Source: Octopus bimaculoides
Taxonomy: Eukaryota
Direction of reading: 5' to 3'
DNA: 64,000 bases
NCBI RefSeq assembly: GCF_001194135.2
Contig: NC_069000.1
Location: 1,028,773 to 1,092,772 of the forward strand
Shown: in pieces, positions 4,501 to 42,499 of the stretch
How positions within the stretch are numbered: position 1 is the first letter of the stretch
How the letters are laid out: every line of letters begins with the position of its first letter
The notes under the pieces: model-generated
Told to the model about the DNA's origin: nothing
Seen by the model: the letters and a program-made list of their open reading frames with translations, nothing else
Databases searched by the model: none
Position numbers and translations under genes: made by a program

Positions 4501-5294
4501 GTATCTACACTACATCCATTCGCAATGTTTCTAATGTCTACGCTACAGGATTCTCGCCTGCAAACTGGACTTTCAATCTTTGGTATGCCGTTTACATGTG
4601 GACGGCTGCTTGGCTTCTCTTCTGTGTATCTACAATCTGTACTGTGAGCGGCAATAGTTACCTCTACCTCGAACCCGATGTGTTTCCCTCTAAGTTCTAT
4701 CTGATCTTTGCCGTTACCCTCTGCCTCAACATCAGCTGGTTCATCCTTTATGACCGATCCTTCTTCATTGCTAGCTTCTTTGTCGCACTTACCATGACTG
4801 TCTTCTCTTTCACCACCCTCGGCATATCGATCTACTATCTCTATCTATATGCGAACACACTCATTAAAAACAGCTTTGGCACTCAGGCCTGTCTCATCCA
4901 GCTGCTCGTCCATAATGGTATTGCCTTCTTTGGCACCTGGGTCACCTTGTTGATGCACATGAATCTGGACATAGCCCTACACTACAGATGGGAGGTGAGC
5001 CGTTACATCAGCGACCTGGTTCCGCTTTGCATCCTGGTTGTTCTCATAGTCACCTGGTTCACCTTGGACATAGCCATCTTCGACACCTTCACCCGATATC
5101 TGCTCAGCCCTTACGTCATGTTGGTGATTGTCTTCTCTGGGGTCGTTCATAAACAAGTCGATGTAAACAGCATCGACAGAATTGGGATTGTTGTTCTGGT
5201 GATGCTAATTCTTAGTTCTGTGACTTTAGTGACCAAATTCCTCTTCATGATCTGGAGGCATTTCAATGGCCCACAGACTAGTCTCTCTGTGTAA
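4501..5294 (+). CDS. Paralog A: large terminal coding exon of a TSPO/TspO-like multi-pass membrane protein (TM2-TM8); upstream TM1 exon not found
   Basis: Polypyrimidine tract and AG at 4499-4500. Phase-1 start gives (G)IYTTSIRNVSNVYATGFSPANWTFNLWYAVYMWTAAW..., open to TAA at 5292-5294 (794 nt). Colinear with B, C and D (NISW..LYDR, LVHNGIAFFGTW, MIWRHF). The ORF track start at 4596 is an internal Met. Confidence 0.9.
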
Positions 5295-5447
5295 AATCTC
5301 ATGACTACTGAAACATGGAAAATAAGATTTGTTTTTCTCAATTTTAATTTTAAAATAACTGAAAAAGGACAATCATTCAATTATTAAGGTTTCAACAAAA
5401 TTTGTGAAATTCTATCTATATTTTTACTGAATTCCATTAATTTTTCC

Positions 5448-5496
<49 letters not shown>

Positions 5497-5498
<2 letters not shown>

Positions 5499-5695
5499 GG
5501 TGGTGAGCTGGCAGAATCATTAGCACGCTGGACGAAATGCTTAGCGGTATTTTGCCCATTGCTATATTCTGAGTTCAAATTCCAGCAAGGTCGACTTGGC
5601 CTTTCATCCTTTTGGAGTCGATAAAATAAGTACCAATTGAGTACTGGGGGCGATGTAAATGACTTACCCCACCTTCCCCAAGCAAAAATTTGAAA

Positions 5696-5733
<38 letters not shown>

Positions 5734-5950
5734 GCTGGCAGAATTGTTAGCATATCAGACCAAAAATGCTTAACAACATTTCTTCCAGCTCTTTACATTC
5801 CAAATTCAAATTCCACCAAAGTCGACTTTGCCTTTTTTTTTTGCCTTTTGGGGTCAATAAAATCTGTACCAGTTTTCTACTGGGATTGAATGTAATTGAT
5901 TTACCCCATCTCCCCTAATATTGCTGTACTTCTACCAAGATTTGAAACAA
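5497..5950 (+). mobile_element. Two tandem family-1 SINEs separated by (ATT)n, just downstream of exon A
   Basis: Heads ggtggtgagctggcagaatc (5499) and aagctggcagaattg (5733), each with B-box gagttcaaattcc and the core gcctttcatcc...ataaaataagtacca. Confidence 0.85.
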
Positions 5951-8020
5951 TTATTGTTATTATTATTATGATTATTATTATTATTAATGCTGTTTTATTT
6001 TTTTTTTAGTAAATAAATATAAAATAAACCTCCCAAATCTTGAACTTGTGTATTTTTGTGACAAATTAGTTTGTTATTATTGAAGTGGCTGCTTTTAATA
6101 TTGTTGCAGTTGTTTTGGTTGTCTGCTATAAATTAAGGTTTTTTTTTGCTATGCAGACAATAAGATTCTGTGTGTGTGTGTGTGTGTGTGTGTACACATA
6201 ATGTTACTGGTTACTGATATTGGTTACATGTTATTGTTGTTGTTGTGCATGTTGGACTGCTGTTTTCTTATCTGCTTCTGTAGTATTGATATTGTTTTAT
6301 GCATGTTTGTTCAGTAGTTGTGTCATATACATGCATGTATGCATGCACACATATTCATGTGTGGACTTTCTTTTTCTAATTTACTCTGCAAACTACACTT
6401 TGGATTGTTCAACAGTTTGATTTGTGAAGTTAGGGCAGCCTTGATGAAAGGCATTTAACATTGAGGAGCTGTGTTACCTCTTGATAGTAGAGGTAGCTTT
6501 GAGGAATATGTCAGCTGAAATATAGGAACATTTTGAGGAGCAAAAATGGCTAGTAAATTTATATCAAAAAAGGAGAAAATGCTTTGAGAATTTTATGAAT
6601 AAAAAGAAAATATTTTTACAATTTCATCTAAATATGCTACCGGTTTCAATTCTTTTAAACCAATTTAGTCATGCTGTAAGAAGAAATTACTATTTCATAT
6701 ATTTGGGAAGTCCACTTGTTTTTCTTACAAAATTCTCATGGTATTGGTTGTTGTTTCCTTCTGATGGCTGCTGGATTGTGAGATATATATATAAAGCTAT
6801 AAAGTGACTCAAATTCTGAGAGTGTCATGCATGGCATTTATGATCAGTGTAATGTATGAAACCCTCAGCCCAGTCAGTTAACCCCAGGCCAATCTAAGCT
6901 ACGTAATTTGCTAGATGGAAAGTGAAAGGAAGCCATTGAATGTGGGTGTGTCTACTTGTCTTGATATCATGCGATAACTGTAAATGAGCATCACCATCAT
7001 ACACGTCAGGTTGTTCGTTTGAATTCTTCCATGGAAACTTGTTCAGCGATGGAGAAATATTACCATGCTTGGAAACAGGTGAGAGTTGGCAACAGGAAGG
7101 ACATTTTGCCACAGAAAATCTGCTTCAACAAATTCCTTTCACCCACCCGATGCACACTTAGAAAAGTGGACATTAAAATCATAAGATCCAGGTATCTAGG
7201 TGTAGGAAGTTAGTAAGCTTCGAGCAGTCCGTAGAAGGTATAAAAAAAAACAACTTTCAGAAATAATAATAGTTTATTGAGATTGAAGGTTGTAGGTTTT
7301 TCTCATATCAAAGTTCAATAAGCTAAAAAAAGTTTCTTTATTGTTCACAGTTAGCAAGTAGGATTGCCATGAATGCAAATAAAAATCCAAAATTGAGGGA
7401 ATGAAGCAGGTAAAATCCTGACTACATAGGTTTCCTTGCTAGCAGATCCTCAAAAGTAATAATTAATCAATAAGAGGTGCTCTACTAATTACTTTTAAAT
7501 TATATCTCTGGCGAGTTAACTTGGGATTCTTTAATGACAATGTATGTAACCTCCGTTTAACTAAGGTATCTTCAGCCTGATGAGTAGTTAGTGGAGGAAC
7601 CCCTCATTGAGTAATCATTACTTCCAAGGGTCTGCTAGCTGGGAAAACATATGTGGCCTAAGCACCCACTACACTCTTGGAGTGGTTGGCTTTAGGAAGG
7701 GCATCCAGTTGTAGAAATTATCAGATGAGAGAGTTCGAGAAGTTAATGTTGTTAGTTGAAGATAAGGAGGACAGACTAAAACTGATCTGGGGGTGAGATG
7801 GTTAGGTCAGCGTTAGGACCAAATAACTCAGAATCATACAGAAGGCAGGAAATAGTTTAGGAAGCAAGGAGAGAATGCAGTTGGATAAGGTATGAGGCAA
7901 TTGAGACGTCGTCCCACAATGTCAAACTAATAATAGGTAAGAATGATTGCGGCTGAATGTTTTCCTATGGAAACCATTCCACTGCAAAGACAGCAACAAA
8001 TATTGAACTAATGGTGATGC

Positions 8021-8298
8021 TAATGGGGGTTAATAATGGTAATTAATAATTAATAATGGGGGTTAATAATGGTAATTAATAATGGTAATTAATAATGGTA
8101 ATTAATAATGGTAATTAATAATGGTAATTAATAATGGTAATTAATAATGGTAATTAATAATGGTAATTAATAATGGNNNNNNNNNNAATAATGGTAATTA
8201 ATAATGGTAATTAATAATGGTAATTAATAATTAATAATGGTAATTAATAATGGTAATTAATAATGGTAATTAATAATGGTAATTAATAATGGTAATTA
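8021..8298. repeat. 13-bp minisatellite (GGTAATTAATAAT)n with a 10-N gap
   Basis: Near-perfect tandem units visible on both sides of the gap at 8177-8186. Confidence 0.95.
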
Positions 8299-8304
8299 AA
8301 GTAA

Positions 8305-8500
8305 TGTGGCAAGCTGGCAGGATTGGTGGCGTGCCAAAATGCTTGGAGGCATTTCATCTAAGTTCAAATTCTGCTAAGGTCAACTTTGACTTTCATCCAT
8401 TTTGGGGTCAATAAAATAAGACCCAGTTGAGCATTAGGGCTCAATATAACTGACTTACCACCCTCCCCCGAAATTACTGGCCTTGTGCCAAAAATGGAAA
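8305..8500 (+). mobile_element. Family-1 SINE
   Basis: gcaagctggcaggatt...gttcaaattctgctaaggtcaactttgactttcatcc...gtcaataaaataagacccagttgagc. Confidence 0.75.
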
Positions 8501-8654
8501 CCAAAATGGAAATTAAAGTAAGTAGAGGACAGAATGAGAGGACAGAGGTCAGCTGCTTGGCTGTTGATGATTTGGTTTCGCAGACTGGACACTCGACCGG
8601 TTCTTGTGACACTTACACACACACACACACATGCATGTACAGAAATATGTACAT

Positions 8655-8990
8655 AGGTGCAAGCATGGTTCAATCCTACTGCATGGTACCTTGGGCAAGT
8701 GTCTTCTACCATAGCCTTGGGCCAACCTAAGCGTTGTGAGTGAATTTGATAAACGGAAACTGAAAGAAGCCCATCATATATGTGTGCAGGTGTGAGTGTG
8801 TCCCATCACAGCTTGACAACCAGTGTTGATGTGTTTATGTCCCCATAGCTTAGCAGTTCAGCAAAAGAGACTGATAGAATAAGCACCAGGCTTTAAAAAA
8901 AAAGAAAAGAAGTAGTGAGGTTGATTCATTTGACCAAGGCATTGCCCCAGCATGGCCACAACCTAATGACTGAAACAAGTAAAAGATGAA
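8655..8990 (+). mobile_element. SINE family 2
   Basis: ggtaccttgggcaagtgtcttctaccatagcc...ggaaactgaaagaagccc...(TG)n...gcttgacaaccagtgttg...ccccagcatggcc...tgactgaaacaagtaaaaga. Other copies at about 47985-48320 (+), 29045-29450 (-), 35330-35660 (-), 47761-47945 (-), 27590-27720 (-), 3620-3710 (+). Confidence 0.8.
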
Positions 8991-9100
8991 AAGTGTACAG
9001 GTAGAGAGGAACATTAGGTGTGTCAGCACAACTGGATGCTCACACATAAGCAGAGAGGGAAGGAGGGAGAGGGAGGGAAGGAGGGGGAGAGGGAGGGAAG

Positions 9101-9437
9101 NNNNNNNNNNNNNNNNNNNNNNNNNNNNNNNNNNNNNNNNNNNNNNNNNNNNNNNNNNNNNNNNNNNNNNNNNNNNNNNNNNNNNNNNNNNNNNNNNNNN
9201 NNNNNNNNNNNNNNNNNNNNNNNNNNNNNNNNNNNNNNNNNNNNNNNNNNNNNNNNNNNNNNNNNNNNNNNNNNNNNNNNNNNNNNNNNNNNNNNNNNNN
9301 NNNNNNNNNNNNNNNNNNNNNNNNNNNNNNNNNNNNNNNNNNNNNNNNNNNNNNNNNNNNNNNNNNNNNNNNNNNNNNNNNNNNNNNNNNNNNNNNNNNN
9401 NNNNNNNNNNNNNNNNNNNNNNNNNNNNNNNNNNNNN
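9101..9437. other. Assembly gap between exons A and B
   Basis: N run. Other gaps: 8177-8186, 22413-22432, 40224-40490, 41730-42231, 43563-43849, 47478-47760, 49018-49116, 52796-52969, 53621-53930, 55684-56520. Confidence 1.
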
Positions 9438-9640
9438 GATAAGCTGGTAATTCATTAAGCAGTGTTGACCAATAGAGGCCTTCTTGAGTTTCTCTCAAAA
9501 CCCATTACTCTTCTCTTGATATCTAATAAGATGGGTTTGTTCTATGAACCCACAAAACTTTAAGTCACATGGAGCTAAATCAAACTATTATTAAATAATT
9601 TGATAGGGAACACCTATCAAATGTGTTGAGTGCCACTTTC

Positions 9641-9676
<36 letters not shown>

Positions 9677-9919
9677 TCATCATCGTTGTCATCGTTTAAC
9701 GTCCTCTTTCCATGCTGGTATGGGTTGGACAGTTTGACTGAGGACTGGTGAACTAGCAGGCAGTACTGGCATCGACCATGTTTGAATGGTGCTTTTTACA
9801 TGCCACTGGCATGGGAGCCAGTGAGGTGGCAAAAACAAAGACAGGTGTATAAACAATAAGCAGGTGTATTAGTTTGATGCTCGGGAAGGTGAGAAAATCT
9901 TTTGTTTAGAGCCTATGCT

Positions 9920-10578
9920 CTTCAACAGAAAGGAACACAAGGAAATAAGGGTCTGTATATAACCATCTGTTATTTCTTCTGTTAACTTTTTGTTCTTGGT
10001 TGAAGTTTTCCTCGTTTAAGAAAAACCAAATCAAATCTTCTTTTGCTGGATTTTTCAGTTTGTTTAAGAGCCTTTTAGATCTGATGTAGTGATTTTCTTT
10101 TGCTTTTTGGGGACAAATTGACTTTTCCTCATCATACAAGACTTGTATCTGATGTCTTCATGGACAACATTTATCGCTATTCCTTCTGACACATGGTGAT
10201 CTTTTGCAAATGACCTCATGGACTTTCTGGGATTGTAATCAAATGGTCTGTTGAATTTGCTGGATAAATTCAGGTCATCTGATGATTTCAGAGCATTTAG
10301 AATGCTTTCTATGCTTTGATACTGGTGATATGTTTCCATCTTTAATCTCCAACTCCTTACAAACTTTGTAGATGAAAGATCTGGTAACTTTTTAAAAATC
10401 GAGATATTTCTAAATCGTTATGCTCAGCTTTTATAACCACAATAACAGAATGCCTCTTCATTTCTTGAATAAGCTGAGGGTCTGCCATTTATTATTTTCT
10501 GAAGCAAAGATTATACAGCGTTAGCAAAAAATGCAGCAATGACCCAAAAAAGAAATGTCCTCAATACCTTATGCACCC
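9920..10578 (-). mobile_element. Degenerate Tc1/mariner (maT/DD37D-like) transposon, 5' end and N-terminal to middle transposase
   Basis: Terminus TA-GGGTGCATAAGG, ATG at 10488 (MADPQLIQEMKRHSVIVVIKAEHNDLEISRFLK). Frameshifted pieces read ELEIKDGNISPVSKHRKHS..PEFIQQIQQ, PRKSMRSFAKD..VVHEDIRYKS and LLNKLKNP..WFFLNEENFNQEQKVNRRNNRWL, matching my recollection of maT-type transposases. Confidence 0.8.
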
Positions 10579-10579
10579 T

Positions 10580-10614
<35 letters not shown>

Positions 10615-10615
<1 letters not shown>

Positions 10616-10900
10616 GGGTGTGTTCATTGACCTCTCTCTCAACAATGCTCCAGATGTAATAGTGCAATGTGTGGGTGTGTGGTATGTTGGTATGAAGTAA
10701 CATCATATATGTCATAGAAAATATGGTTCTTGGTTCACTACTCCTAGGAAGAGAGAATGCCTTTGATAATAGGGGTCTTCTTGAAATGAGTGTAACTCTT
10801 ACCCAGCCTTGTATTAACCACTCTATCCAGTCCTTATTCTTCAGAATGTTATCCCTCTGGAACTCCCTCCTCATTGCACTTTAAGAACATCATCAACCAT
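10615..10900 (-). mobile_element. C-terminal fragment of a maT/Tc1-mariner transposase
   Basis: Reads ...LHYYIWSIVEREVNEH, resembling the (SPDLNP)LDYYVWSIVEREVN motif after the third catalytic Asp; upstream part is degenerate. Confidence 0.6.
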
Positions 10901-11248
10901 ATTGGTGTCACTGACCTTGTGAAGGCCTTGGCAAAGCCCCCTTTTCAAGATCAAACCAATTAATAAATCAAAAGTCCTTATCTCTATTTAGTTTTTAATT
11001 GTTGTTCAATGTTGTTTTCTTCCAAAAGTTTCTCAGCACAATTAATATCCTAACATCTGTTTCGAATGCATCATGATATGGCTTCTACTCTTTAAAAAGA
11101 CACTGGGTTTTATTTCTGCATGTGTTTGTGGTTTTGCTCAAGCATGGCCATTTTTCACCATGTAAAAAATAAAAACAATATTTTCCTCATTAGTTGATTA
11201 CTTTGTCTTTCCTGATATTTGTGTTTCTTCTTTTTTAAATCTTTCTAG

Positions 11249-12033
11249 GTATCTACACGTCCACCATGTCAAATGTATCTAATGAGTTTATGACTGGAGT
11301 CACTCCAGCTCGATGGACCTTTGGTATCTGGGGAGTAATCTACTTCTGGATGGCTGCCTGGATCATCTACTGCCATGCTGCTATCTTCATTAAATGGGAC
11401 GGTGATTACTTGTATAAAAACGATGTATTTGCACCTGGCATCTTTTTTGTCCTTTATAGCATCAACCTGATTCTCAACTTCACTTGGCTCATTCTCTTCG
11501 ACAGAAAGCTCATTGTTGCTTCTTTCTTTGTTCTCCTTGCATTGGCAATCACTGCCGTTGCATGCTTATGCATAGCCATGTACGCGTTTAAGAAGGGAAT
11601 GCAAAACATTGCCCAATCTGAATTCAAGCTCCACTTCTGGCTCATCCAGATCCTAATGTTCAACGGCATTGCCTGTTACGCTACATGGCTGACCATAGCC
11701 ACTAACCTAAACCTCAACATTGCTCTGACATATGCATGGAATTTTAATGGAGACACAGTGATTCTTATCGTCCTGCTTTTTATTGGTGCAACAATTATTT
11801 CAGCAGACATGATTATCTTTGAGAAACATACTCTTTACATTATCACACCTTATTTGGTTCTGGTGGTTGCCCTCTATGGCGTTGTTGATGAACATGTTGA
11901 TATAGAGGACTTGTCTCGTATTGGTATATTCATGATAGTTGTACTGGCCCTCTTCTGTGGTGGTCTTCTCTATAAAATTGTTGCAACTATTTGGAGACAC
12001 TTCCGATGTCAACGGCCTGCAGCACTAATCTAG
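11249..12033 (+). CDS. Paralog B: large terminal coding exon of the same TSPO-like multi-pass membrane family
   Basis: Acceptor ctttctAG at 11247-11248. Phase-1 start gives (G)IYTSTMSNVSNEFMTGVTPARWTFGIWGVIYFW...YATWLTIATNLNL...IWRHF, stop TAG at 12031-12033 (785 nt). Length differs from A and C by multiples of 3. Confidence 0.92.
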
Positions 12034-12260
12034 AACAGCTTCCTCCAAGTCTTTGTCTCTCACCCATTTCTTTGCTTGCACTATTTTTCAATCCTATAAA
12101 AACTCCTGATAACCAAGATGGTATTTTATTTGGGCTTTCTCCTCCATTCTTAGCTTCTTCTGTCTTGCTCAGTTGTTTCATTTTCCATCAGTAAAGCTTT
12201 GTCATTTTAATCTCATCAAAAATATACAAAAAAAAAATTAATTTTTCTAATTAGTAATTA

Positions 12261-12446
12261 CTTTATTTAGTGGCATATAAGACACTTACTTCCCCTCAAA
12301 ATTGTCTCAGAATATCCTCCAGGGTCCTATATGTAATGTTGGGCCTACATGCTTTAATACACTAAATGTTTTTTCTCTCACTATGTGCTGTCGAAATTGG
12401 GGATGCATTTAAGATGGCCAAGTGTCTTTTATGCCAACAAATACGG
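12261..12446. mobile_element. MITE with about 25-bp terminal inverted repeats and TA flanks (Tc1/mariner-pogo-like)
   Basis: Left TA-CTTTATTTAGTGGCATATAAGACAC; right end reverse-complemented TA-CCGTATTTGTTGGCATAAAAGACAC (20/25 match). Confidence 0.7.
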
Positions 12447-12785
12447 TACCTTATTATTCCATTTATTTCGGAGTTTTGGGAGTATTTTTCGGTTTTTCTG
12501 CTTCAAAGACAAGTTGCTTCATTTCTTCCATTATGGAATATTAAGTGCAAATTGTTAAAATTTATAGATTTGCACTTTGTATTTTCTGAAACCTTGCAAC
12601 TTTCACGTCTTTCTTCGTTTGTCGCTTCAATCAATTTCACAATCTTGTTAATTAATTGTCCTTCACCTTGACATAATAATGGCTTTGCTCTCGTTAACTC
12701 TTGTCTCAATTCTGACACAAATTACACACACTAAATTACTGAAATGTCTTTAACTCAAGTTAAAAGTGTGTGTGTCTGTGTGTGT

Positions 12786-13075
12786 GAAGGCATGTGGCCT
12801 AGTAGTTAGGGAGTTGCACTCACGATAGCTAGATTGTGGTTTCAATTCCTGGACTAGGTGGTACATTGTGTTTTTGAATGAGCAATTCATCTCATATTTC
12901 TCTGGTTCACTCAGGCGTAAATGAGTTACCCTGCAAAGGGCCAGCCTCCCAATCAGGCGGAATGTTGGCCTCTTCACCTAGCTTGTGGGGTAGCAGCATC
13001 TGAAAGCTAAAACAATGCAAAGTGCACTGTGACCAGCGATGTGGAACAACATCTGATAGTCTGGTTGATCACCAT
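12786..13075 (+). mobile_element. SINE with tRNA-like head (A and B boxes)
   Basis: A-box-like tggcctagtagttagg (12795) and B-box-like ggtttcaattcc (12838), followed by non-tRNA body; similar copy at 48845-49017. Not a functional tRNA. Confidence 0.7.
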
Positions 13076-13087
13076 GATATATGTATA

Positions 13088-13119
<32 letters not shown>

Positions 13120-14084
13120 ATGTTTGTTTTTATGTCAAGAGATATATAAAAACCATTTAAGATTAAACTGAAGAATTGTTTAATACTTTATAGTTGAGTA
13201 AATGTTTATTAAATTTTTACAAAGGAAAGGATTCACCTCTATCAGACTGTCTGACAAAGGTGAGGAAACCAAAACTTCAAAGTTACTGTTAACCTTTCCC
13301 TGGTAAAAGTTACACACACACACACACATAAATATTGTGTCATTGTCGACCAATTGATTTTATGTTGTATTGTTATTGCATAGTGCCAGATGCACAATTT
13401 GAAAAATAAAAAACTGGATGGTCACAGTTGGAACCGCTTTCATTGTAGGTATGTTTAATCAGGGTTGACTTGGTGCTATATACAACTTTTTTATCTCATC
13501 CATCATCTCCCGTCTTTACAGCATCTTTACAGCATCTCCCTCATCATAACGTCCATTTAAAGCCAGTGAAAGAGGCAACCACCATTCTGCAAATGGTTCT
13601 GGTTTTATTTGAAATTATTTTAATTCTTAACATTGTTATCATTGGGCTTGTGGTGTTCAAATCTTACCATGGTTGATTTTGTTTTTCAACTTTCCAGGGT
13701 CAATAAAATAAACACCTGTCTGTCATGTACTGATTTCAGTTTAGCCAACCATGCCCTTCCCTTACAAATTTGTATCATTGTATTCCTACAATTATTATCA
13801 GCAACTTTTATTTTTTTAAAGTCAGTTTTTTCTCATAACTTTTCCTTTCGCTCAAAGTCATCTATTTTCATGTATTGATCTATTGATCTTTTCAAAATTA
13901 CTCAAGCTGAAGGGAGTTCCTTTTAATCCTTTCCAATATGATTCTCAAACAATAAAGATGGAACATGTAACTAGAAATCAGGAAATTCTTTAACCCATTC
14001 CTAAAAAAAGACACCGTCCAATTTGTTTTTGAGCTAATTTTGAAAGCAATAAAGTATTTGGAAGGAATTGATCAAACAAAATTA

Positions 14085-14650
14085 CGATATTCGCTGGTGT
14101 ATAAGACACACTCTCATGTAAGATGCATTTCTGTTTTACAAATATATTTTGTGGAGAAAAACAAATGTTTCATCGCACACTTATTTGAAGACATTTTAGG
14201 CTGGGGGGGGGGGCAATGCATGTTTCTGTGCAAGTAGATACAATACTGTGACAGTATACAGCAATAAAGTTTGAAACTATAAATAAACTGTTACATATAA
14301 GTATTGTATTTCAAATTTATCTTGCTTTAGTTCAAAACTGATTGTGATGTTTTGTGTTACAACAATCTGCCACCAGGGTGCTGAACCACTGCTATGATTT
14401 TGGTGTCATCCACTCATTGCAAAATCCTGACAGGCATATGAAAGGTTAACGAAACATTCCTTTCATCTTTCTTGGGGAATTTTCACTTAAATAATAACAA
14501 AAAGAAACTTTCTTAAATGTAATGCAGTCCTTAAATAAGACATATATCAGGTGTGGGTTATGTATGAGTTGATGTAACCAGTTGACAGGGGCAGTTTTTT
14601 AATAAATTTAGAAATAAAAAGAAACATGTCTTATACACTGGCAAATACCA
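14085..14650. mobile_element. MITE with related TIRs and TA flanks (pogo-like), 566 bp
   Basis: Left TA-CGATATTCGCTGGTGTATAAGACAC; right end reverse-complemented TA-TGGTATTTGCCAGTGTATAAGACAT; most mismatches are CpG-type transitions. Confidence 0.75.
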
Positions 14651-15119
14651 TAACATTTGTTTATCAAGCTGGTTTTTGGAACATAACGTAATGGGGTAAA
14701 GTTCTGATGTAAAACTGTTAGAATATAAATATTTAAATTAAAGGGTCTCGAATTACAGAACAATTAATTTAAACTCATCAGAACTAGTAACATTCTTTCA
14801 AAAACCTGAAGGTCGTGTCAGACAGGATGGACTCCATTTATTTCGTTATAGAAATCTTGGCTATTTTGTTCTGTTATCCTCTCTTGTTTTTTTCATATCT
14901 TTTTATATTCTTTTAAAGTTGTAACTTTAAATATATTTTTATATTTTCTTTGTATTTTATAAATTCTCATGTTGATTGTTCTGTAACTACATGTGTACGT
15001 GAACCTGCACTAGTTTACATACCTACTATCTACTTATATATATATCTATCTATATATTACATTACATTTATGTATATGTGTATATTAATTTATCACATTT
15101 TCTTCTGTGTACCTGACTC

Positions 15120-15157
<38 letters not shown>

Positions 15158-15755
15158 TTTATATATGGATGTTTCTTAATATCCATTACACAATAATGTA
15201 AGATTAAGATGTATGCTTTATTAATTCAGTTTTATTTCATCACCAAAATATCCATGTTGCCTTAAACCAATCTAAATGGACATATAAAATTCATAAGGTC
15301 TATTTCTTCTTGTGGCTGCTATCAATACAATTATTTATTTTTAATTATTAACCATGACATAACTGAAATCTCTCACATTTCCAGCACATGCATCCCTTTC
15401 TTGTACATCACACCACCTTTACATATTTTGTACAACATATAAAAATAACCTCCACTTTTTCTTTTTTCTTCCTTTATTTGGCTTTTTGTGCCTTGGGTTT
15501 TGTCTTACTAAATTCTTTGTATCTGCTCCCCGCTTTTTTTTTCTACTTGGTAACACTATGCCTTCTGCAATCAGGCATCAAATACCACAACATTAAAACT
15601 TCTCTATTTTGTCAGAAGAATAACTAAGACAATTTGCAATCTCATCTCAAACATGAGAGACTGGAATATAAAAGGCTTGAAAAGTATTCGACTTTGCATT
15701 TGTAAACTCTATTTGTGCATTTGTATGTATGCACATACATATCTACATGTGTATG

Positions 15756-15792
<37 letters not shown>

Positions 15793-16383
15793 TGGCTCAT
15801 TGGATCCTGTTAAACTGTCCAACCCATGCCAGCATAGAAAATGGGTATTAATTGATGACACACACACACAACCACAGAACAGACTGCATATTTGATTATC
15901 TTTATTCTTAGGGGTTTTTTTCTTGAAAATAATATTGAATATGTTATTATTCTCAAAAGAAAGAAAAATTTACTTTCTACGACAGCTTTTGATAGAGACT
16001 TTGTGCTAATACAATAAAACGTCTCTGATCTTTTATTCCAGACAAACAACCATCAACTTAGGTCTATACAGTTTAACATCTCTGTCATCTCAAGCATTGC
16101 TGTCAGGTATAAAGGGAGGGAAAGACACCACAAGGCATTTTGCTCAATCTTCTAACATGGAAGACAGATAGAGTTGCCATGTAAATGACATGAAATATTT
16201 GCAGCACAGTTGCAAAGTGTTGTAAAAACTAAATTTAAATTGATTGTTTTTCTTTCTCATAAACGTAGTCAATTATGTCTCCCATGCTGTGAGATGTCTG
16301 TGTGTGTATGTGCACACACATATATATACATACATATTTTTACATACATACCATCTAAAAACAGGCGTTAAAGGATGATGATG

Positions 16384-16425
<42 letters not shown>

Positions 16426-16657
16426 GTGTGTGTATGTATAAATATATACACACACACACATTATCCAGTTTACCTTCTCCATTTTCTTTTCCCATTTCTT
16501 TCTCTTCTTGTCTATCCTTCCTTCTTTTCAGAAGAAGAGTGAATACTCGAAACATAAAAGACATGCTCTTCTTTTTTTGCCAGTTCTTTATTGTCAACCT
16601 AATACACTCTTTTTTTTTGCCCCCTTTTTTTTTTTAACTCTATTGTATTTTTTGCAC

Positions 16658-16722
<65 letters not shown>

Positions 16723-16864
16723 GCTTTTTGTAAAACTACAAATCTATATTTGTATTTCTACTTTGGTTTGGCAATAAATATTCTGATGCACAGACGATGA
16801 TATTGTAGTTGTGTTTTCACTTTGATACCCCTGTGGCAAATAAAAGAAAATTATATTAATTACT

Positions 16865-17023
16865 TTTACTCATTCATTCCATTTTTACATTCTGAATTCA
16901 AATGCTACCAAGGTTGACTTTGCCTTTCATCCTTTCAGGGTCAATAAAATAAGTACCAGTTATGCACTGGGGGTTGATGCAGTCAACTAACCACTCCCCC
17001 TAAACTTGCTGGCCTTTGAAACA

Positions 17024-17065
<42 letters not shown>

Positions 17066-17315
17066 ATTATTATTATTATTATTATTAATATTATTATTAT
17101 TATTAATATTATTATTATTATTATTATTATCAACATGGTGAGGTAGCAGAATCGTTAGCACACCAGGCCAAATGCTTAGCAGTATTTTGTCCATTTTTAC
17201 ATTCTAAGGTCAAATTTCGTCAAAGTTGACTTTGCCTTTCATCCTTTTGATGTCAACGGAATCAACTTACCTCCTCTCTCAAAATTTCAGGCCTTGTGCC
17301 TATAGTAGAAAAGAT
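16865..17315 (+). mobile_element. Two to three family-1 SINE copies/fragments around a long (ATT)n run
   Basis: Core motifs at about 16890-16970 and 17135-17260; (ATT)n with periodic AAT at about 17025-17130. Confidence 0.8.
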
Positions 17316-17699
17316 TATTATTATTGCTATTATTCGTGATCTGAGTAATACATGAAGAGAGTTTTTCTTGAACCAGGGACTTAGGTATATCTTGGAGCAC
17401 AAATGTGCAGAGAAGAGTTCAAGGTTAACAAAGGAGTTCATGAGTAAAGAAATGTCTAAGGTTAACACAGCATGTCCAACATTAACAAATATTCTGTGTT
17501 CTAATGCCCTAACAATGTTTACAGATCTTCGTACTGCTATTTTCAGGAACACGCCTATGTCCACCTTAGAGGGAATTTATCAATGCCCTTACAGAAATAG
17601 TTATGTATCACTCCCATTTAACTAATTACCTATATGCTCATTAGACACAAATTAACAGCTAGGTTGGTGTCATTGAGTTTCTTTCAACTTCCGTCACAT

Positions 17700-18330: not shown

Positions 18331-18394
18331 TCCACAGGTTTTTGACAGCAAAGAATGACATGGAGTGCCAGCACTAGCATCACCTCACTCAAGA

Positions 18395-18432
18395 GGTCAG
18401 GGTCAGGGTCAAGGTCAGGGTTAGGGTCAGGG
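18395..18432 (+). repeat. Short telomere-like hexamer array (TCAGGG)n with one TTAGGG
   Basis: ggtcagggtcagggtcaaggtcagggttagggtcaggg. Confidence 0.7.
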
Positions 18433-18617
18433 CACAACATAGACACACACACACACTTCTGTACATATTGGAGGCAGACTGGGGATTCACTAGTCTGAAC
18501 ATTCTGTTGCTTTAAAGTACCTTTTTATCATTAATAGGGTTATGATAATGAGCAGAGATGTTGAATTCCATGTGAGCCTGTTGTCTTCACAATTTCTTCA
18601 AGGATATACACATGCCC

Positions 18618-18684
<67 letters not shown>

Positions 18685-20426: not shown

Positions 20427-20473
<47 letters not shown>

Positions 20474-23766: not shown

Positions 23767-23816
<50 letters not shown>

Positions 23817-23848
23817 TAAATAGCATATATACTTCATTGTTGAATGGT
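23735..23848. repeat. 114-bp palindrome centred on (AT)19 with one mismatch
   Basis: Positions pair as i + j = 47583; the only mismatch is A23748/C23835. Confidence 0.95.
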
Positions 23849-34512: not shown

Positions 34513-34966
34513 TCAATTCATGTCATGAGTTGTCGGCAGGGCATATATCGGTGCTTTTATGATAATGGGTTGGTGCGAGTGTAGCCATGTGACTGTGAAA
34601 AACTTACAGAGAAGCATCAGAGCCGACAGGACAAGCAGAACACAGGTCAAGATGGAATTCCTTGGATGGAGAGACAAGTCAAAGTGCTGCACCATTATTC
34701 CTGTGAAGGCTACGATCAGCACAACGTACGGTGTGAATGTATAGCGGACATATTTGTCAAGAATTATGCAATCAAGCATGAACCACAGAAGCATGAGGAG
34801 AGCCGCAATTCCAAGTGAAATTGTGCCGGCCATATTTTTATTGATGCCACCACTGTTAGAGAGTACAATGGCAAAGTTGAGCAGTGTAGCAAAAGTACTC
34901 CAAGTTGCATAGAAAGACAATCCATTCTGGACCAGGATACGCATCAACCAGACATCAGTGCCAAGA
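34513..34966 (-). CDS. Paralog D coding exon 3 (TM5-TM8 and stop); full gene 933 nt, 310 aa
   Basis: Acceptor ctatttttccAG (34968-34967). The first T completes GA-T (Asp), then LGTDVWLMRILVQNGLSFYATWSTFATLLNF...THDMN, TGA at 34515-34513. The three exons sum to 933 nt with consistent phases. Confidence 0.9.
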
Positions 34967-36877: not shown

Positions 36878-37250
36878 TCTTCTTTGTAAAGTAAGTTGAG
36901 GAACTTGTAAAGGTTTTTAAAGGAACAATAAAGGGAGAGATAGAGGGAGATGACTGAAGCGGCAAGCATGGCAAGGGCCACTTGTAACATCTCATGAATC
37001 CAAACAAAAGTCCAGGCAATTGTGAATATGTTGTTGACAGCGAAAGCAATGTAGAAGGTTGTTGATAAGATTGGTGGGAAGACATAAAGGTAGTGGTTAG
37101 AACGACTTCGACAGATCAAAGACATTCCGTAGAGCAGCCATACCACTTGCCACAGGTAAATTATGGACCAAATGAAGAAAGTCTGAGAGGCAGGCGTAAT
37201 GCTGGAGGAGTATTTTCTTGAGACATCTGCAATTGTTTGGTTAAAAAGTC
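36878..37250 (-). CDS. Paralog D coding exon 2 (TM2-TM4)
   Basis: Acceptor tgtttcAG (37252-37251). Reads (G)LFNQTIADVSRKYSSSITPASQTFFIWSIIYLWQVVW...KFLNLLYKE. 373 nt = 2+369+2, ending at phase-2 donor GA|GTGAGT. Confidence 0.9.
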
Positions 37251-38810: not shown

Positions 38811-39023
38811 CCCTTTACTATTCGAACCAGCCATATCTGGCCCAAACATTCTGTGTTTTGTTCAAACTGACCACACCTGGCTTCTCACCCAACATTATTA
38901 TTCCAAAAGTAAACAATCACATCATTGAAATCTCACAGCTATGAGATAAAACCATGACTAATTCAAAACAATATGAATAAATAAGGATTGTGTGTTTCAC
39001 AGAGTAATCTGAGTGTTAAAGGG
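38811..39023. mobile_element. piggyBac-like MITE (TTAA-CCCTT...AAAGGG) in intron 1 of paralog D
   Basis: Left TTAA|CCCTTTACTATT, right GTGTTAAAGGG. Related CCCTT/CCTTT-ended fragments at about 28860-29000, 36740-36841, 44430-44540 and 50730-50830. Confidence 0.6.
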
Positions 39024-40589
39024 TGAGATGTTGAGCCAACTTGAAAGAATCTCCATCGTGTTGCAACATCAGAACCAATTTTCACCTTAATTTAATAAAA
39101 CTTGCAGAAAGGACAACGACCAGGGTCAAGCCTGGTCAAGCATTCCATGACCAGACAATATGTTCAGGAAAACTACATTGTTCAATGAGTTCTTCATATT
39201 TTAAGATGGTAAAATATGGTTTGAAAGTGAATTGTGCTGCTATATCTAGCAGGCAGAGTAACCATGTAGAACAATTTGGAAGGAATTTGTTGAGTTGGCT
39301 GCAAAATTGGCACCGAAACCATATTTTGAGCCGAGTAATTCATATCTATCCATCCATCCATTCATTTCTTCCACCCACTTTTCCTGAGAGAATCATTGGA
39401 GGTAAGGCGGGGGGGGGGGGTCCTCAGACACCACCTCCATAGGCTCTTACCAGAAGCAATCATTATGCTTATTGGCTGGATTCCCAGCTTGACCAACTGA
39501 GTCTTGCTCTAGCCCTTGGTCTCCTGCCAGTTGGCTCAGCTTGAAGAATCCATTTTTTCCTGCAGTAAAAATTTTTTTTAATGTATTTTACTAGTGTCAC
39601 GATCTTCCAACTCCAGAGCCACTGGGGACCAAAGCTTCATCATTCACCTCTCCAGGGTCACTAAAGTAATTACCAGTTACACAATAAGGACAATTCCAAA
39701 GACATTAATTTTTTTCTCTCTCTCTCTGCCCCACCTCATCTTCAAAAGGAATTTCACATGTTAAAAAACCCCAATTCCAGTCAGTCACCTTCTATTTGTA
39801 TGTTTACATTTGTTGCAAATATATTTGGATGTGAAGAAGAGAACTTGTGTTGATTTAAGGACAAAAATAAGAAAATTCTTCCAGAAATTTCCATTAAAAA
39901 TAGAACGGAGGAGAGGGAGTTCATCAAACACAATTATAAAAGCATTAGAGAGAGAGAAGGGGGGAGACAGAGAAAGGGGCGTGAGAAGAGGGTGTGATAA
40001 AGTTGGGTCAGAGAAGGGATGTTTGAGGTCCATTTCCCTACCAGTTAGTCACACACACACACAGACATACAGAAAGAGAAAAATTATAAGAGATGTGTGT
40101 ATTCGATGATAATGATACACACACACACACAACCTCCAACCCATTTATATATAAATAGTTTTTGCATTTCTTAAAAATTCAATCTGAAAACAAAACAAAA
40201 ATATATAAAAAAAAAAAGCTTCCNNNNNNNNNNNNNNNNNNNNNNNNNNNNNNNNNNNNNNNNNNNNNNNNNNNNNNNNNNNNNNNNNNNNNNNNNNNNN
40301 NNNNNNNNNNNNNNNNNNNNNNNNNNNNNNNNNNNNNNNNNNNNNNNNNNNNNNNNNNNNNNNNNNNNNNNNNNNNNNNNNNNNNNNNNNNNNNNNNNNN
40401 NNNNNNNNNNNNNNNNNNNNNNNNNNNNNNNNNNNNNNNNNNNNNNNNNNNNNNNNNNNNNNNNNNNNNNNNNNNNNNNNNNNNNNNNNNTGAAACTCAA
40501 TTAATTAATTAATAACATATTTAGTGAAAAGGTCATCCTCTTCGGTGTGGTTGCTGCCACTGCAATTACTTCAATTATAATTCTTTCTA

Positions 40590-40750
40590 ATTTTGGCACA
40601 AGGCCAGTGATTTTGAGGGGAGGGGAAAGTCCACTACAGCAACTCCCAGTACTCAACCGGTTTTCTCATCCTTGAAAGGACGAAGCCCAAACCTCGGCAG
40701 GAATTGAACTGAGAATGGAAAGTGCTGGAAGAAAGGCCGCAGACCATATT
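40590..40750 (-). mobile_element. Family-1 SINE
   Basis: ttttggcacaaggccag...cccagtactcaac...cctcggcaggaattgaactgagaat. Confidence 0.7.
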
Positions 40751-41127
40751 GTATATTTGGATATTTATTAGGGGCCAGGTTCTACATAAAATGCACCCAG
40801 TACACTCTGTAAAGTAGTTGGCATAAGGAAGGGCATGCCAAAAGAGACAATGGAACCTGGTATGGCACTTGGTCTTGTCAGCTTCTGTCACACTGTCCAA
40901 CCCATGCCAGCCATGGAAAATGGACATTAAATGATAACAGCACACAGATGAGCAAGTTTTTTTTCTACAGCCAAATGCTCTTTCTGTGGCCAGCCCTCAC
41001 CTGTTCCCAAGCAAGCCAAAATCAAAAACTGCCTCATCAATCCTGAGCTGAGTGGTTGGGAAAGAGTTTTAGAAGAATCTCATTTCCATAGAGAGGAGGT
41101 TGGAGCAATCAAAATGTTTTTACTTAC

Positions 41128-41233
41128 CGCAATGAATCTTTGGATTCCCAGCTAATGTTGCGATGATTACTGAGAGAATGAACATCAATGTCGCAAACAC
41201 AATGGCAAAAAGACGAAAGTAGTTTTGCTTCAT
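41128..41233 (-). CDS. Paralog D coding exon 1 (TM1): MKQNYFRLFAIVFATLMFILSVIIATLAGNPKIHC-G
   Basis: Not in the ORF track. On the minus strand: acceptor tatttttccAG (41240-41239), 5 nt of UTR (GCAAG), ATG at 41233 with A at -3, 35 mostly hydrophobic codons, then phase-1 donor G|GTAAGT. The phase matches the exon at 37250. Confidence 0.85.
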
Positions 41234-42499
41234 CTTGCCTGGAAAAATACAAGAATAAAATTATAAATATTATGGTTTACTAATAGCAAACATTCATCTA
41301 ATAAGGCTACCAATGGTCTCATGCAAAGAGATTCTTTACAGTTGTTTAAGCATCCGTCTCCAAAATGGAGACGAGTACCAACAGTCCCGTGTAGTATGCT
41401 TGAACAATTGGTAAAGAGTCTCTTTACAGGAAACCATTGGTAGCTTTGTTAATCCACAAACAAAGAATATTTATCCACCAATGCGATGTTGAGTGCTCAT
41501 TCTCACTGTTCGATATTAGAGTACACACACACACACACAAAGTACTCTGAAAAAGCATTCAGTACACTGAAGTAATTGTCATTAGGAAAAGTATCTGGCT
41601 GTACAAAAAATACAGCAAGTCCCCAGCCATCCTATGCTAGTATGGAATAAACTTGCAGATACACACACAAATAGCCAGCAATAGTCCACAGCCAAAGAGA
41701 AACAGGCTGATTCTCACAAATAAATATGTNNNNNNNNNNNNNNNNNNNNNNNNNNNNNNNNNNNNNNNNNNNNNNNNNNNNNNNNNNNNNNNNNNNNNNN
41801 NNNNNNNNNNNNNNNNNNNNNNNNNNNNNNNNNNNNNNNNNNNNNNNNNNNNNNNNNNNNNNNNNNNNNNNNNNNNNNNNNNNNNNNNNNNNNNNNNNNN
41901 NNNNNNNNNNNNNNNNNNNNNNNNNNNNNNNNNNNNNNNNNNNNNNNNNNNNNNNNNNNNNNNNNNNNNNNNNNNNNNNNNNNNNNNNNNNNNNNNNNNN
42001 NNNNNNNNNNNNNNNNNNNNNNNNNNNNNNNNNNNNNNNNNNNNNNNNNNNNNNNNNNNNNNNNNNNNNNNNNNNNNNNNNNNNNNNNNNNNNNNNNNNN
42101 NNNNNNNNNNNNNNNNNNNNNNNNNNNNNNNNNNNNNNNNNNNNNNNNNNNNNNNNNNNNNNNNNNNNNNNNNNNNNNNNNNNNNNNNNNNNNNNNNNNN
42201 NNNNNNNNNNNNNNNNNNNNNNNNNNNNNNNGAAACTGGTCCCACAGGAGGAACCTGCTTGTGGTCAATAGAAACAGACCCACTAGAAATAGGTGCAATC
42301 CCATGGTCAGTCATGACCGAAGGGGGTCTCAGTAGAGAGAGAGAGAGAGATAGAGAGAAACAGAGAGAGTGCTATATCTCACGAGTTCATTTTGCGTCTG
42401 TTTTCTATGCTGGTATGGGTTGGTTGGCTTGATAGGATATGGCAAGCCATAGGGCTGCATGAAGCACCAGTGTCAGTTTAGGGGTGGGTGTATGCACAC

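What the first reader, a model, noticed from the sequence alone, without database searches (positions are those of the whole stretch)
4501..41238. Four-member cluster of TSPO-fold-like 8-TM proteins in a probable octopus genome
Seen: all four share TPAxW/QTFxIWxxIY, NxxWxxLF, NGxxFYxxWxxxATxLN and a terminal WRH/WLH. Established: TSPO/TspO has PPxWxFxxVWxxLY in TM2, LNxxWxxxF in TM3 and YxxWxxFAxxLN in TM5, and binds porphyrins and sterols. Inference: TM1-TM5 form a TSPO-like module with three added helices. From memory, this resembles an uncharacterised family (PANTHER si:ch211-161h7.5-related; bacterial tryptophan-rich sensory proteins), which I have not verified. A local expansion with intact, diverged frames suggests a repertoire of small-molecule binders, sensors or transporters.
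Basis: partly seen in the sequence, partly recalled or inferred. Interest (0 to 1): 0.72.

Follow-up and report, generated by a model that had tools for sequence, protein, structure and literature searches.

The report
Octopus TSPO-like eight-helix membrane protein locus
This stretch of the Octopus bimaculoides genome holds four related coding units for an unstudied eight-helix membrane protein distantly related to the porphyrin/sterol-binding protein TSPO, but three of the four are alternative last exons of one gene, not separate genes.

Summary
The four paralogous units are real and no assembly gap interrupts them. The window is Octopus bimaculoides chromosome CM046620.1, an exact match. The cluster holds two genes, not four.

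**Gene 1** (LOC106877552, + strand) has one start-codon/TM1 exon, 600-708 bp before the window. It splices in the same phase to one of three alternative terminal exons: A 4501-5294, B 11249-12033, C 24402-25192. Each encodes TM2-TM8. They are 37-44% identical to each other, and dN/dS between octopus species, computed for A and B, is about 0.16.

**Gene 2** (LOC106877549, - strand) has three coding exons in the window.

The proteins belong to the uncharacterised family named si:ch211-161h7.5 / si:dkey-29d8.3 in fish. Bacterial members of 240-290 aa are called 'tryptophan-rich sensory protein'.

- AlphaFold gives a confident 8-helix bundle (pLDDT 91.5).
- Sequence profiles link TM2-TM5 to TSPO in register: Pfam 24.8 bits against a cut-off of 24 for B, hhalign E 2e-5, and a bacterial bridge protein.
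- Foldseek did not retrieve any solved TSPO structure. It did retrieve predicted viral TspO proteins.
- Unexpectedly, Foldseek also matched herpesvirus glycoprotein M and a fish-herpesvirus ORF.

Function is untested. A TSPO-like ligand pocket diversified by exon choice is the best guess.

The parts
4501..5294 (+). Alternative terminal exon A of LOC106877552 (isoform X1). It encodes the TM1-TM2 loop plus TM2-TM8 and the stop codon. The acceptor AG is at 4499-4500, phase 1.
   Evidence: The translation is identical to P0005 / XP_014781969 from residue 37 on. Acceptor sequence. HMM E 3.5e-91. dN/dS 0.155 against O. sinensis.
11249..12033 (+). Alternative terminal exon B of LOC106877552 (isoform X3, 297 aa). 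The acceptor AG is at 11247-11248, phase 1.
   Evidence: The 297-aa isoform X3 product (P0214) ends at this exon's stop, and its printed first 75 residues match the exon translation. It is 92% identical to O. sinensis isoform X3, P0001. Pfam TspO_MBR 24.8 bits. dN/dS 0.177.
24402..25192 (+). Alternative terminal exon C of LOC106877552 (isoform X2). The acceptor AG is at 24400-24401, phase 1.
   Evidence: The translation is identical to P0004 / XP_014781971 from residue 37 on. HMM E 7.8e-97. It is 92.6% identical to O. sinensis isoform X2. This is the isoform modelled with AF2.
41128..41238 (-). LOC106877549 (gene D) exon carrying TM1. It has an in-frame ATG at 41233-41231, the start of isoform X2 (310 aa). 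The acceptor AG is at 41240-41239 and the donor GT at 41127-41126, phase 1.
   Evidence: Sequence read. It matches P0006 residues 27-68 and the start of P0222. HMM E 2.3e-5.
36878..37250 (-). Gene D exon encoding the TM1-TM2 loop and TM2-TM4. The donor is phase 2 (KE|D), an intron absent from A, B and C.
   Evidence: Splice sites. 99% match to P0006 residues 68-192. HMM E 1.4e-44.
34513..34966 (-). Gene D terminal coding exon, encoding TM5-TM8, the WLH motif and the stop codon.
   Evidence: 100% match to P0006 residues 194-342. The CDS end agrees with L007 position 45222. HMM E 8e-57.
5295..11248 (+). Region downstream of exon A that is intron for isoforms B and C. It holds assembly gaps 8177-8186 and 9101-9437 and no family exon.
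   Evidence: HMM and tblastn scans find no TM1-like or body exon here, nor in the gap-free O. sinensis equivalent.
12034..24401 (+). Region downstream of exon B that is intron for isoform C. It holds gap 22413-22432 and no family exon.

Best explanation
The region holds two convergently oriented genes. Both belong to an ancient, uncharacterised 8-TM branch of the TspO/MBR (TSPO) superfamily.

**Gene 1** (LOC106877552, + strand) has a single coding exon with the ATG and TM1. It lies 600-708 bp upstream of the window start. It is spliced in phase 1 (G|GT) to one of three mutually exclusive terminal exons, A, B or C. Each supplies the TM1-TM2 loop, TM2-TM8 and its own stop codon. One promoter and one TM1 therefore yield three proteins whose bodies are only 37-44% identical.

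**Gene 2** (LOC106877549, - strand) is a conventional paralogue with its own TM1 exon and one extra intron.

The ancestral molluscan gene had two coding exons, TM1 and body. The octopus array arose by triplication of the body exon in the cephalopod lineage.

**Inferred mechanism.** TM1-TM5 form a TSPO-like bundle around a Trp-rich pocket for a hydrophobic ligand such as a tetrapyrrole, sterol or lipid. TM6-TM8 are a family-specific extension. Exon choice swaps the whole pocket and so diversifies ligand specificity.

**Shown:** exon anatomy, gene models, conservation, the 8-TM fold, and the sequence-profile link to TSPO.
**Inferred:** mutually exclusive use in vivo (RefSeq models only), and any ligand binding.
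For: **Locus identity.** The window is an exact match to O. bimaculoides CM046620.1.

**One gene with three terminal exons**
- The annotated gene has three products of 300, 297 and 299 aa. They share one start and end at the A, B and C stops.
- They are named isoforms X1, X3 and X2.
- O. sinensis has the same arrangement and the same A-to-B order. C lies beyond the fetched O. sinensis locus.
- The shared exon MLEHRPAKIAVIVVTLIIFIVTAVLNAYASQPDSSS(G) was read at L007 10001-10109 with a GTAAGA donor.
- No other TM1-like exon lies between A, B and C, in the window or in gap-free O. sinensis. The same HMM does detect D's divergent TM1 exon, which serves as a positive control.
- All three acceptors have the same phase.

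**The units are functional**
- dN/dS is 0.155 for A and 0.177 for B.
- All four units are 92-96% identical between the two octopus species.

**Transcript evidence from relatives**
- A spliced transcript from another cephalopod joins TM1 to a body exon (L006).
- A 1.4-kb contig encodes a whole D orthologue.

**Origin of the array**
- The Ruditapes gene has two coding exons, split just after TM1. The first Danio intron is at the same place.
- The ABC clade and the D clade each have 100% bootstrap support and are cephalopod-only.

**Fold and TSPO link**
- AF2 gives pLDDT 91.5 and pTM 0.90 with 8 TM helices.
- Pfam PF03073 hits B at 24.8 bits against a gathering score of 24.
- Pfam PF03073 hits 14 of 148 family representatives.
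- hhalign of the animal-only profile against TSPO gives E 2e-5, 112 columns, with motifs in register.
- Bacterial P0046 scores 63 bits on the animal-only HMM across eight helices, and 42 bits (E 9e-11) on TspO_MBR.
- Foldseek matches predicted viral TspO/MBR proteins.
Against: - Foldseek against 350,542 PDB chains found no significant match with the full model or the TM1-TM5 model (best E 0.42 and 2.7). That library includes TSPO entries 2MGY, 4UC1 and 4RYI.
- The family HMM does not hit TSPO sequences in the PDB.
- hhalign probabilities are only 77% and 56%.
- A, C and D alone do not reach any Pfam threshold.
- Use of the three terminal exons rests on RefSeq predicted models. I saw no octopus transcript spanning a TM1-A, TM1-B or TM1-C junction.
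- B has an in-frame ATG at 11266, so a TM1-less product cannot be excluded.
- Poly(A) hexamers downstream of each exon are expected by chance in 63% A+T DNA.
- No functional data exist for any family member.
Confidence: 0.72

Rival explanations
1. There are four independent tandem genes. Each has its own promoter and first exon, and the first exons for A, B and C are unannotated or hidden in assembly gaps.
For: - Gaps of 337, 10 and 20 N lie upstream of B and C.
- B has an in-frame ATG at 11266.
- The RefSeq models are predictions.
Against: - No TM1-like exon lies upstream of B or C in the window. None lies in the gap-free O. sinensis A-B interval either. The method does find D's TM1 exon at only 22% identity.
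- All homologues from bacteria to fish begin with TM1.
- All three acceptors share the phase of the single upstream donor.
- Two species' annotations agree.
Confidence: 0.07
2. The family is not homologous to TSPO. The Trp-rich motifs are convergent features of an unrelated 8-TM fold whose real relatives are proteins such as herpesvirus glycoprotein M.
For: - Foldseek retrieves no solved TSPO.
- It retrieves glycoprotein M of alpha-, beta- and gammaherpesviruses at TM 0.71-0.80 over the whole length.
- Pfam PF01528 is hit by 5 of 148 members.
- hhalign probability is below 80%.
Against: - Three motifs align in the same order and register over four helices.
- Independent members hit PF03073 and no other family recurrently.
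- The bridge protein P0046 is strong on both sides.
- Foldseek also matches predicted TspO/MBR proteins of giant viruses (E 1.4e-5 and 2.8e-3).
- The two relationships are not exclusive.
Confidence: 0.12
3. The proteins are TSPO-related in origin but do not work as small-molecule binders. They work as membrane scaffolds or trafficking partners of small single-pass proteins, as glycoprotein M does with gN. Exon choice would then change the partner, not the ligand.
For: - The whole-length fold matches glycoprotein M.
- The conserved family-specific TM6-TM8 and the cytosolic WRH tail have no TSPO counterpart.
Against: - The most conserved residues are the TSPO-pocket equivalents: P56, W64, W116, N175, G176, W183, A187 and N191.
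- Bacterial members have no obvious gN-like partner, though I did not examine this.
Confidence: 0.12
4. One or more of A, B and C are decaying duplicate exons that are no longer used.
For: A departs most from the family motifs. No octopus transcript was seen here.
Against: - All frames are intact in two or three species.
- dN/dS is about 0.16.
- Amino-acid identity between species is 92-94%.
- Acceptor sites are intact.
Confidence: 0.05

Closest known systems
TSPO / TspO (TspO_MBR, Pfam PF03073; structures 2MGY, 4UC1, 4RYI)
   Same: TM2-TM5 align in register with TSPO TM2-TM5:
- (T)PAxWTFxIWGxIY with PPRWxLxPIWGTLY
- LNxxWLxLW with LNWAWPPIFF
- YATWxxxATxLN with YLAWLAFATVLN

There is also a short helix in the TM1-TM2 loop. 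The conserved Trp, Asn and Ala positions match pocket positions W53, W95 (within one residue), W143, A147 and N151 of mouse TSPO.
   Different: - About 300 aa and 8 TM helices, against about 160 aa and 5 TM.
- Three extra conserved helices and a cytosolic WRH tail.
- Only borderline Pfam scores.
- No solved TSPO retrieved by Foldseek.
- Predicted N-in/C-in topology, with a frequent N-x-S sequon in loop 1. This hints at the secretory pathway, not the mitochondrial outer membrane (inference).
- No ligand data.
si:ch211-161h7.5 / si:dkey-29d8.3 family of fish and invertebrates, and bacterial 240-290-aa 'tryptophan-rich sensory protein' homologues
   Same: Full-length homology (E 1e-59 to 1e-74 to fish and coelacanth). 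Bacterial members align across all eight helices. The intron after TM1 is shared with a bivalve and with zebrafish.
   Different: The bivalve (Ruditapes) and zebrafish genes examined are single genes with one body. The octopus gene has three alternative bodies. No member has a known function, and only one paper in the library even mentions a member.
Genes with one constant 5' part and an array of alternative 3' terminal exons (Drosophila lola and mod(mdg4); the mirror image of protocadherin and UGT1A variable-first-exon clusters); comparison from general knowledge
   Same: One promoter and a common 5' coding exon are joined to one of several tandem, paralogous terminal exons. Each terminal exon has its own stop codon.
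   Different: There are only three variable exons. The constant part is a single TM helix, and the variable part is nearly the whole protein. Regulation of the choice is unknown.
Herpesvirus envelope glycoprotein M (UL10 family, Pfam PF01528) and Cyprinid herpesvirus 2 membrane ORF114
   Same: - Predicted structures superimpose over the whole 8-TM bundle. ORF114 gives E 3.6e-10, TM 0.82/0.86, rmsd 2.8 Å and 21% identity.
- Glycoprotein M of alpha-, beta- and gammaherpesviruses gives E 8.5e-5 to 5e-3 and TM 0.71-0.80.
- Five of 148 family members hit PF01528.
   Different: - Sequence identity to glycoprotein M is 10-14%.
- The octopus proteins do not hit PF01528.
- Glycoprotein M is larger and works with gN in virion envelopment.
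- Whether glycoprotein M keeps the Trp-rich motifs was not examined.

Membership tests
TspO/MBR (Pfam PF03073) | Score at or above the Pfam gathering threshold (24 bits) | tested here: inconclusive
   B scores 24.8 bits (E 2.1e-5), covering residues 18-159 against profile positions 32-144 of 145. A, C and D have no hit even at E <= 10. 5 of 45 and 14 of 148 family members hit.
TspO/MBR (Pfam PF03073) | Conserved TM2, TM3 and TM5 motifs in the same order and register | tested here: met
   hhalign of the animal-only profile against mouse, human and R. sphaeroides TSPO gives E 2e-5 and 77% probability. Family residues 53-194 align with TSPO 41-154. The 148-sequence profile gives the same register.
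TspO/MBR (Pfam PF03073) | Five-TM protein of about 150-180 aa | tested here: not met
   AF2 shows eight TM helices in 299 aa. Bacterial relatives also span all eight.
TspO/MBR (Pfam PF03073) | Three-dimensional superposition on a solved TSPO structure | tested here: inconclusive
   Foldseek against the PDB found no TSPO with the full or the TM1-TM5 model. Predicted viral TspO/MBR proteins did match (E 1.4e-5 with TM 0.62/0.77; E 2.8e-3 with TM 0.75 on the target). No forced pairwise superposition was possible with these tools.
TspO/MBR (Pfam PF03073) | Binding of tetrapyrroles, cholesterol or PK11195; outer mitochondrial or bacterial membrane location | not testable with these tools
   Needs biochemistry and imaging.
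8-TM si:ch211-161h7.5-related family | Full-length sequence homology to named members | tested here: met
   E values of 1e-59 to 1e-74 to fish, coelacanth, chimaera and bivalve proteins over 87-97% of the length. There are 2240 representatives at E <= 1e-3.
8-TM si:ch211-161h7.5-related family | Eight TM helices; TM1 on its own exon followed by a phase-1 intron | tested here: met
   AF2 model. Exon structure in octopus, Ruditapes and Danio.
Alternative 3'-terminal-exon array | A single shared 5' coding exon, and no private first exons | tested here: met
   O. sinensis is the same.
Alternative 3'-terminal-exon array | Every variable exon has a compatible acceptor and its own stop, and is under purifying selection | tested here: met
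   Phase-1 acceptors. dN/dS 0.155 and 0.177. 92-94% identity between species.
Alternative 3'-terminal-exon array | Transcripts that join the constant exon to each variable exon | not testable with these tools
   Only RefSeq predicted isoforms were available. One spliced transcript came from a different cephalopod.
Herpesvirus glycoprotein M (PF01528) | Match to the family profile | tested here: not met
   The octopus proteins have no PF01528 hit at E <= 10. The resemblance is in fold only.

The most novel reading that the evidence does not exclude
Coleoid cephalopods use a lola-like array of alternative terminal exons to swap the entire ligand pocket of a TSPO-related 8-TM protein. This gives a small repertoire of receptors or binders for different hydrophobic small molecules from one promoter. 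The same 8-TM TSPO-derived family would also be the cellular relative from which herpesvirus glycoprotein M and the cyprinid-herpesvirus ORF114 descend.
Probability: 0.12. Interest if true: 0.8.

Novelty: new variant of a known kind. Interest (0 to 1): 0.55.

Why it matters
TSPO is a heavily studied drug and imaging target whose core function is still disputed. A second, larger branch of the same superfamily has no characterised member. It is present from bacteria to fish and invertebrates, and no tetrapod appears among the named hits. It offers an independent way to ask what the Trp-rich bundle does.

The octopus locus adds a natural experiment. Three versions of the pocket-forming body sit behind one TM1 and one promoter, and each is kept by selection.

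The whole-length fold match to herpesvirus glycoprotein M, if confirmed, would give that universally conserved but poorly understood virion protein a cellular relative.

Tried and rejected
- phmmer of B and hmmsearch of the family profile against PDB sequences found no TSPO.
- Foldseek of the full model and of a separately predicted TM1-TM5 model against the PDB gave only insignificant helical-repeat and membrane-protein hits.
- NCBIfam has no model for the octopus or bacterial members.
- I searched for private TM1 exons upstream of A, B and C by tblastn with three TM1 queries and by HMM. Only low-complexity Ile runs turned up.
- A weak tblastn hit at 52378-52106 was not confirmed by the HMM scan, so there is no fifth copy.
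- The 5'-most coding exon of D isoform X1 (MRLFNATKAN...) is not in the window in any frame.
- Logan contigs for P0002 turned out to be genomic DNA of another octopus, not transcripts.
- L008, from another cephalopod, holds one A-like exon and no neighbour within 10 kb, so it says nothing about the array.
- Literature searches for the family names, TSPO in cephalopods, and a glycoprotein M-TSPO link found nothing relevant.

Full report
**1. What is in the sequence**

The window has 36.6% G+C and eleven runs of N. Between 4000 and 42000, three ORFs of 150 aa or more contain no unread letters, all on the + strand. They are 4596-5294, 11266-12033 and 24287-25192.

tblastn with these three ORFs finds each other. 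It also finds a fourth copy on the - strand, split in two pieces at about 37250-36880 and 34960-34570.

In every copy the similarity starts a few codons upstream of any ATG, at a consensus G-I/L-Y/F-T/N. This point lies directly behind a polypyrimidine tract and an AG. Exact boundaries:

| Unit | Strand | Coding exon(s) in the window |
|---|---|---|
| A | + | 4501-5294 |
| B | + | 11249-12033 |
| C | + | 24402-25192 |
| D | - | 41238-41128, 37250-36878, 34966-34513 |

The finding's start and end coordinates are exon boundaries.

A profile HMM of the family, run against all six reading frames, finds these six pieces and nothing else.

None of the four assembly gaps named in the finding touches a coding exon. 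They lie in the A-B interval, the B-C interval and the first D intron seen in the window.

**2. The motifs**

The four motifs as written occur literally in 3, 2, 2 and 4 of the four units. Relaxed forms occur in all four at identical positions.

**3. Which organism, and how many genes**

The window is identical to O. bimaculoides assembly GCA_001194135.2, chromosome CM046620.1, with 0 mismatches in 35,192 bases.

- The A and C exon translations are identical to the bodies of RefSeq isoforms X1 and X2 of LOC106877552.
- The 297-aa isoform X3 ends at the B stop, and its printed first 75 residues match the B exon.
- D is LOC106877549.

The three isoforms share one start and end at the three stop codons. 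I read the shared exon directly. It runs ATG...TCG G|GTAAGA at L007 10001-10109, which is 708 to 600 bp before window position 1. It encodes MLEHRPAKIAVIVVTLIIFIVTAVLNAYASQPDSSS plus the first base of a Gly codon. Its phase fits all three acceptors, which begin with GT.

O. sinensis has the same arrangement. One TM1 exon sits 12.8 kb upstream of A, followed by A and then B. A third product of the same gene (isoform X2, the C body) runs past the end of the fetched locus.

Searches with three different TM1 peptides and with the HMM find no second TM1 exon between A, B and C. This holds in the window and in the gap-free O. sinensis sequence. The same HMM does pick up the divergent TM1 exon of D, so the test has power.

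Every homologue from bacteria to fish starts with TM1. A, B and C are all maintained by selection: dN/dS is 0.155 and 0.177 for A and B, and all four units are 92-96% identical between the two species. The only consistent reading is one gene with three mutually exclusive terminal exons, plus a second, convergent paralogue.

I did not see octopus transcripts across the junctions. What I have is:

- RefSeq models from two species;
- a spliced transcript from a cuttlefish-like cephalopod joining TM1 to a C-like body (L006);
- a 1.4-kb contig encoding a complete D orthologue.

**4. Origin of the arrangement**

The bivalve Ruditapes has a two-coding-exon gene: residues 1-33 (TM1) and residues 34-305 (the rest). 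The zebrafish gene has its first intron at the same place. The ancestral unit was therefore TM1 exon plus body exon, and the octopus array is a triplicated body exon.

In a bootstrapped NJ tree:

- A+B+C form a cephalopod-only clade (100%).
- D forms another (100%) that includes Argonauta and Sepia.
- A cuttlefish-type sequence groups with C (88%).
- A sequence from another cephalopod groups with A (100%).

The exon duplication therefore predates the species compared here. No bivalve or gastropod sequence is a one-to-one orthologue of any unit. In Sepia pharaonis, a D-like and an ABC-like protein carry consecutive accession numbers, which suggests the adjacency is old.

**5. What the protein is**

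Homologues found with the family profile carry these names:

- si:ch211-161h7.5 and si:dkey-29d8.3 in fish;
- 'uncharacterized' in coelacanth, chimaera, a tunicate, a crinoid, a bivalve and a bryozoan;
- 'tryptophan-rich sensory protein' or 'benzodiazapine receptor' (the source's spelling) for bacterial proteins of 240-290 aa.

Further representatives were identified as limpet, freshwater mussels, a nemertean and an acorn worm.

An exhaustive HMMER search counts 2240 cluster representatives at E <= 1e-3 and 277 at E <= 1e-30.

AlphaFold2 on a 45-sequence alignment gives pLDDT 91.5 and pTM 0.90. It shows eight long helices (5-30, 58-81, 100-121, 125-152, 163-199, 204-229, 239-255, 263-291) and a short helix (43-49) in the first loop. 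Bacterial members align over all eight helices.

**6. Relation to TSPO**

For:

- B alone passes the Pfam TspO_MBR threshold (24.8 against 24 bits), covering profile positions 32-144.
- PF03073 is the only Pfam family hit recurrently by members, 5 of 45 and 14 of 148.
- An animal-only profile aligns to a small TSPO profile with E 2e-5. Family residues 53-194 align with TSPO 41-154, placing all three motifs opposite their TSPO counterparts. I checked the mouse TSPO sequence against 2MGY.
- The bacterial protein P0046 scores 63 bits on the animal-only HMM over nearly its whole length, and 42 bits (E 9e-11) on TspO_MBR.

Against:

- The family HMM finds no TSPO among PDB sequences.
- Foldseek against the PDB finds nothing significant with the full model or a separately predicted TM1-TM5 model.

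Foldseek against predicted viral structures does return two giant-virus TspO-type proteins. One gives E 1.4e-5 and TM 0.62/0.77. The other gives E 2.8e-3 and TM 0.75 on the target.

I conclude that the family is a distant, extended branch of the TspO/MBR superfamily. It is not a TSPO in the strict 5-TM sense.

**7. Likely mechanism**

This section is inference.

The invariant or near-invariant family residues are P56, W64, W116, N175, G176, W183, A187 and N191. All lie in TM2, TM3 and TM5. Most map onto TSPO positions: P44, W53, W95 (within one residue), W143, A147 and N151. From the published TSPO structures, as general knowledge, these line the ligand cavity.

The best guess is therefore a membrane-embedded pocket for a flat or hydrophobic small molecule. 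TM6-TM8 and the basic WRH tail would be a family-specific addition. Each alternative exon encodes everything except TM1, so exon choice replaces the whole pocket.

The positive-inside pattern and a frequent N-x-S sequon in loop 1 suggest an N-in/C-in protein of the secretory pathway. This is weak evidence.

**8. Unexpected result**

The same Foldseek search matched two further groups:

- Cyprinid herpesvirus 2 membrane ORF114 over its whole length: E 3.6e-10, TM 0.82/0.86, rmsd 2.8 Å.
- Glycoprotein M of alpha-, beta- and gammaherpesviruses: eight hits, E 8.5e-5 to 5e-3, TM 0.71-0.80.

Five of 148 family members also hit the glycoprotein M Pfam family. I found no paper noting this. One 2026 survey lists glycoprotein M as 'not detected' in a salmonid herpesvirus and 'not reported' in other alloherpesviruses. 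I record it as a lead, not a result.

**9. Verdict**

- The feature is real.
- The family assignment is right.
- The TSPO relationship is supported by sequence, but only partly by structure.
- The 'four-member cluster' is corrected to two genes, one with a three-exon alternative array.
- The locus is already annotated, as 'uncharacterized', in RefSeq.
- The protein family has no known function and no dedicated Pfam or NCBIfam model.

Noticed in passing
AF2 model of isoform C (window 24402-25192 plus the shared exon); Foldseek: The whole-length fold matches herpesvirus glycoprotein M of alpha-, beta- and gammaherpesviruses (TM 0.71-0.80). It matches Cyprinid herpesvirus 2 membrane ORF114 even more closely (E 3.6e-10, TM 0.82/0.86, 21% identity). 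ORF114 may be a captured fish homologue. Pfam PF01528 is hit by 5 of 148 family members.
   Followed up: partly
just outside the window: 708-600 bp before position 1 (L007 10001-10109): The only start-codon/TM1 exon for units A, B and C lies just outside the window.
   Followed up: yes
window 41260-64000, minus strand: The 5'-most coding exon of D isoform X1 (31 residues, MRLFNATKAN...) is not present in any frame of the window. It must lie beyond position 64000 or elsewhere. Isoform X2 starts at the ATG at 41233.
   Followed up: partly
named hits: Named homologues come from ray-finned fish, coelacanth, chimaera, a tunicate, echinoderm, hemichordate, molluscs, a nemertean, a bryozoan and bacteria. 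No tetrapod appears. The family may have been lost in land vertebrates, which would explain why it is unstudied.
   Followed up: no
Sepia pharaonis proteins CAE1283132.1 and CAE1283133.1: A D-like protein and an ABC-like protein have consecutive accession numbers. This suggests the two genes were already neighbours before octopods and cuttlefish diverged.
   Followed up: no
window 5419-5520, 5693-5764, 5953-5997, 17005-17151, 23800-23830, 34400-34440: A+T-rich microsatellites read as long Ile or Tyr-Ile runs. They produce spurious 'transmembrane-like' tblastn hits between the exons.
   Followed up: yes
window 4844-4473 (-) and 25213-24869 (-): Antisense ORFs of 124 and 115 codons overlap exons A and C. 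They are most likely by-products of the codon bias of the sense strand, not genes.
   Followed up: no
L008 898-1248: A reverse-transcriptase fragment (RVT_1, weak) lies 9 kb upstream of the A-like exon in another cephalopod's contig.
   Followed up: no
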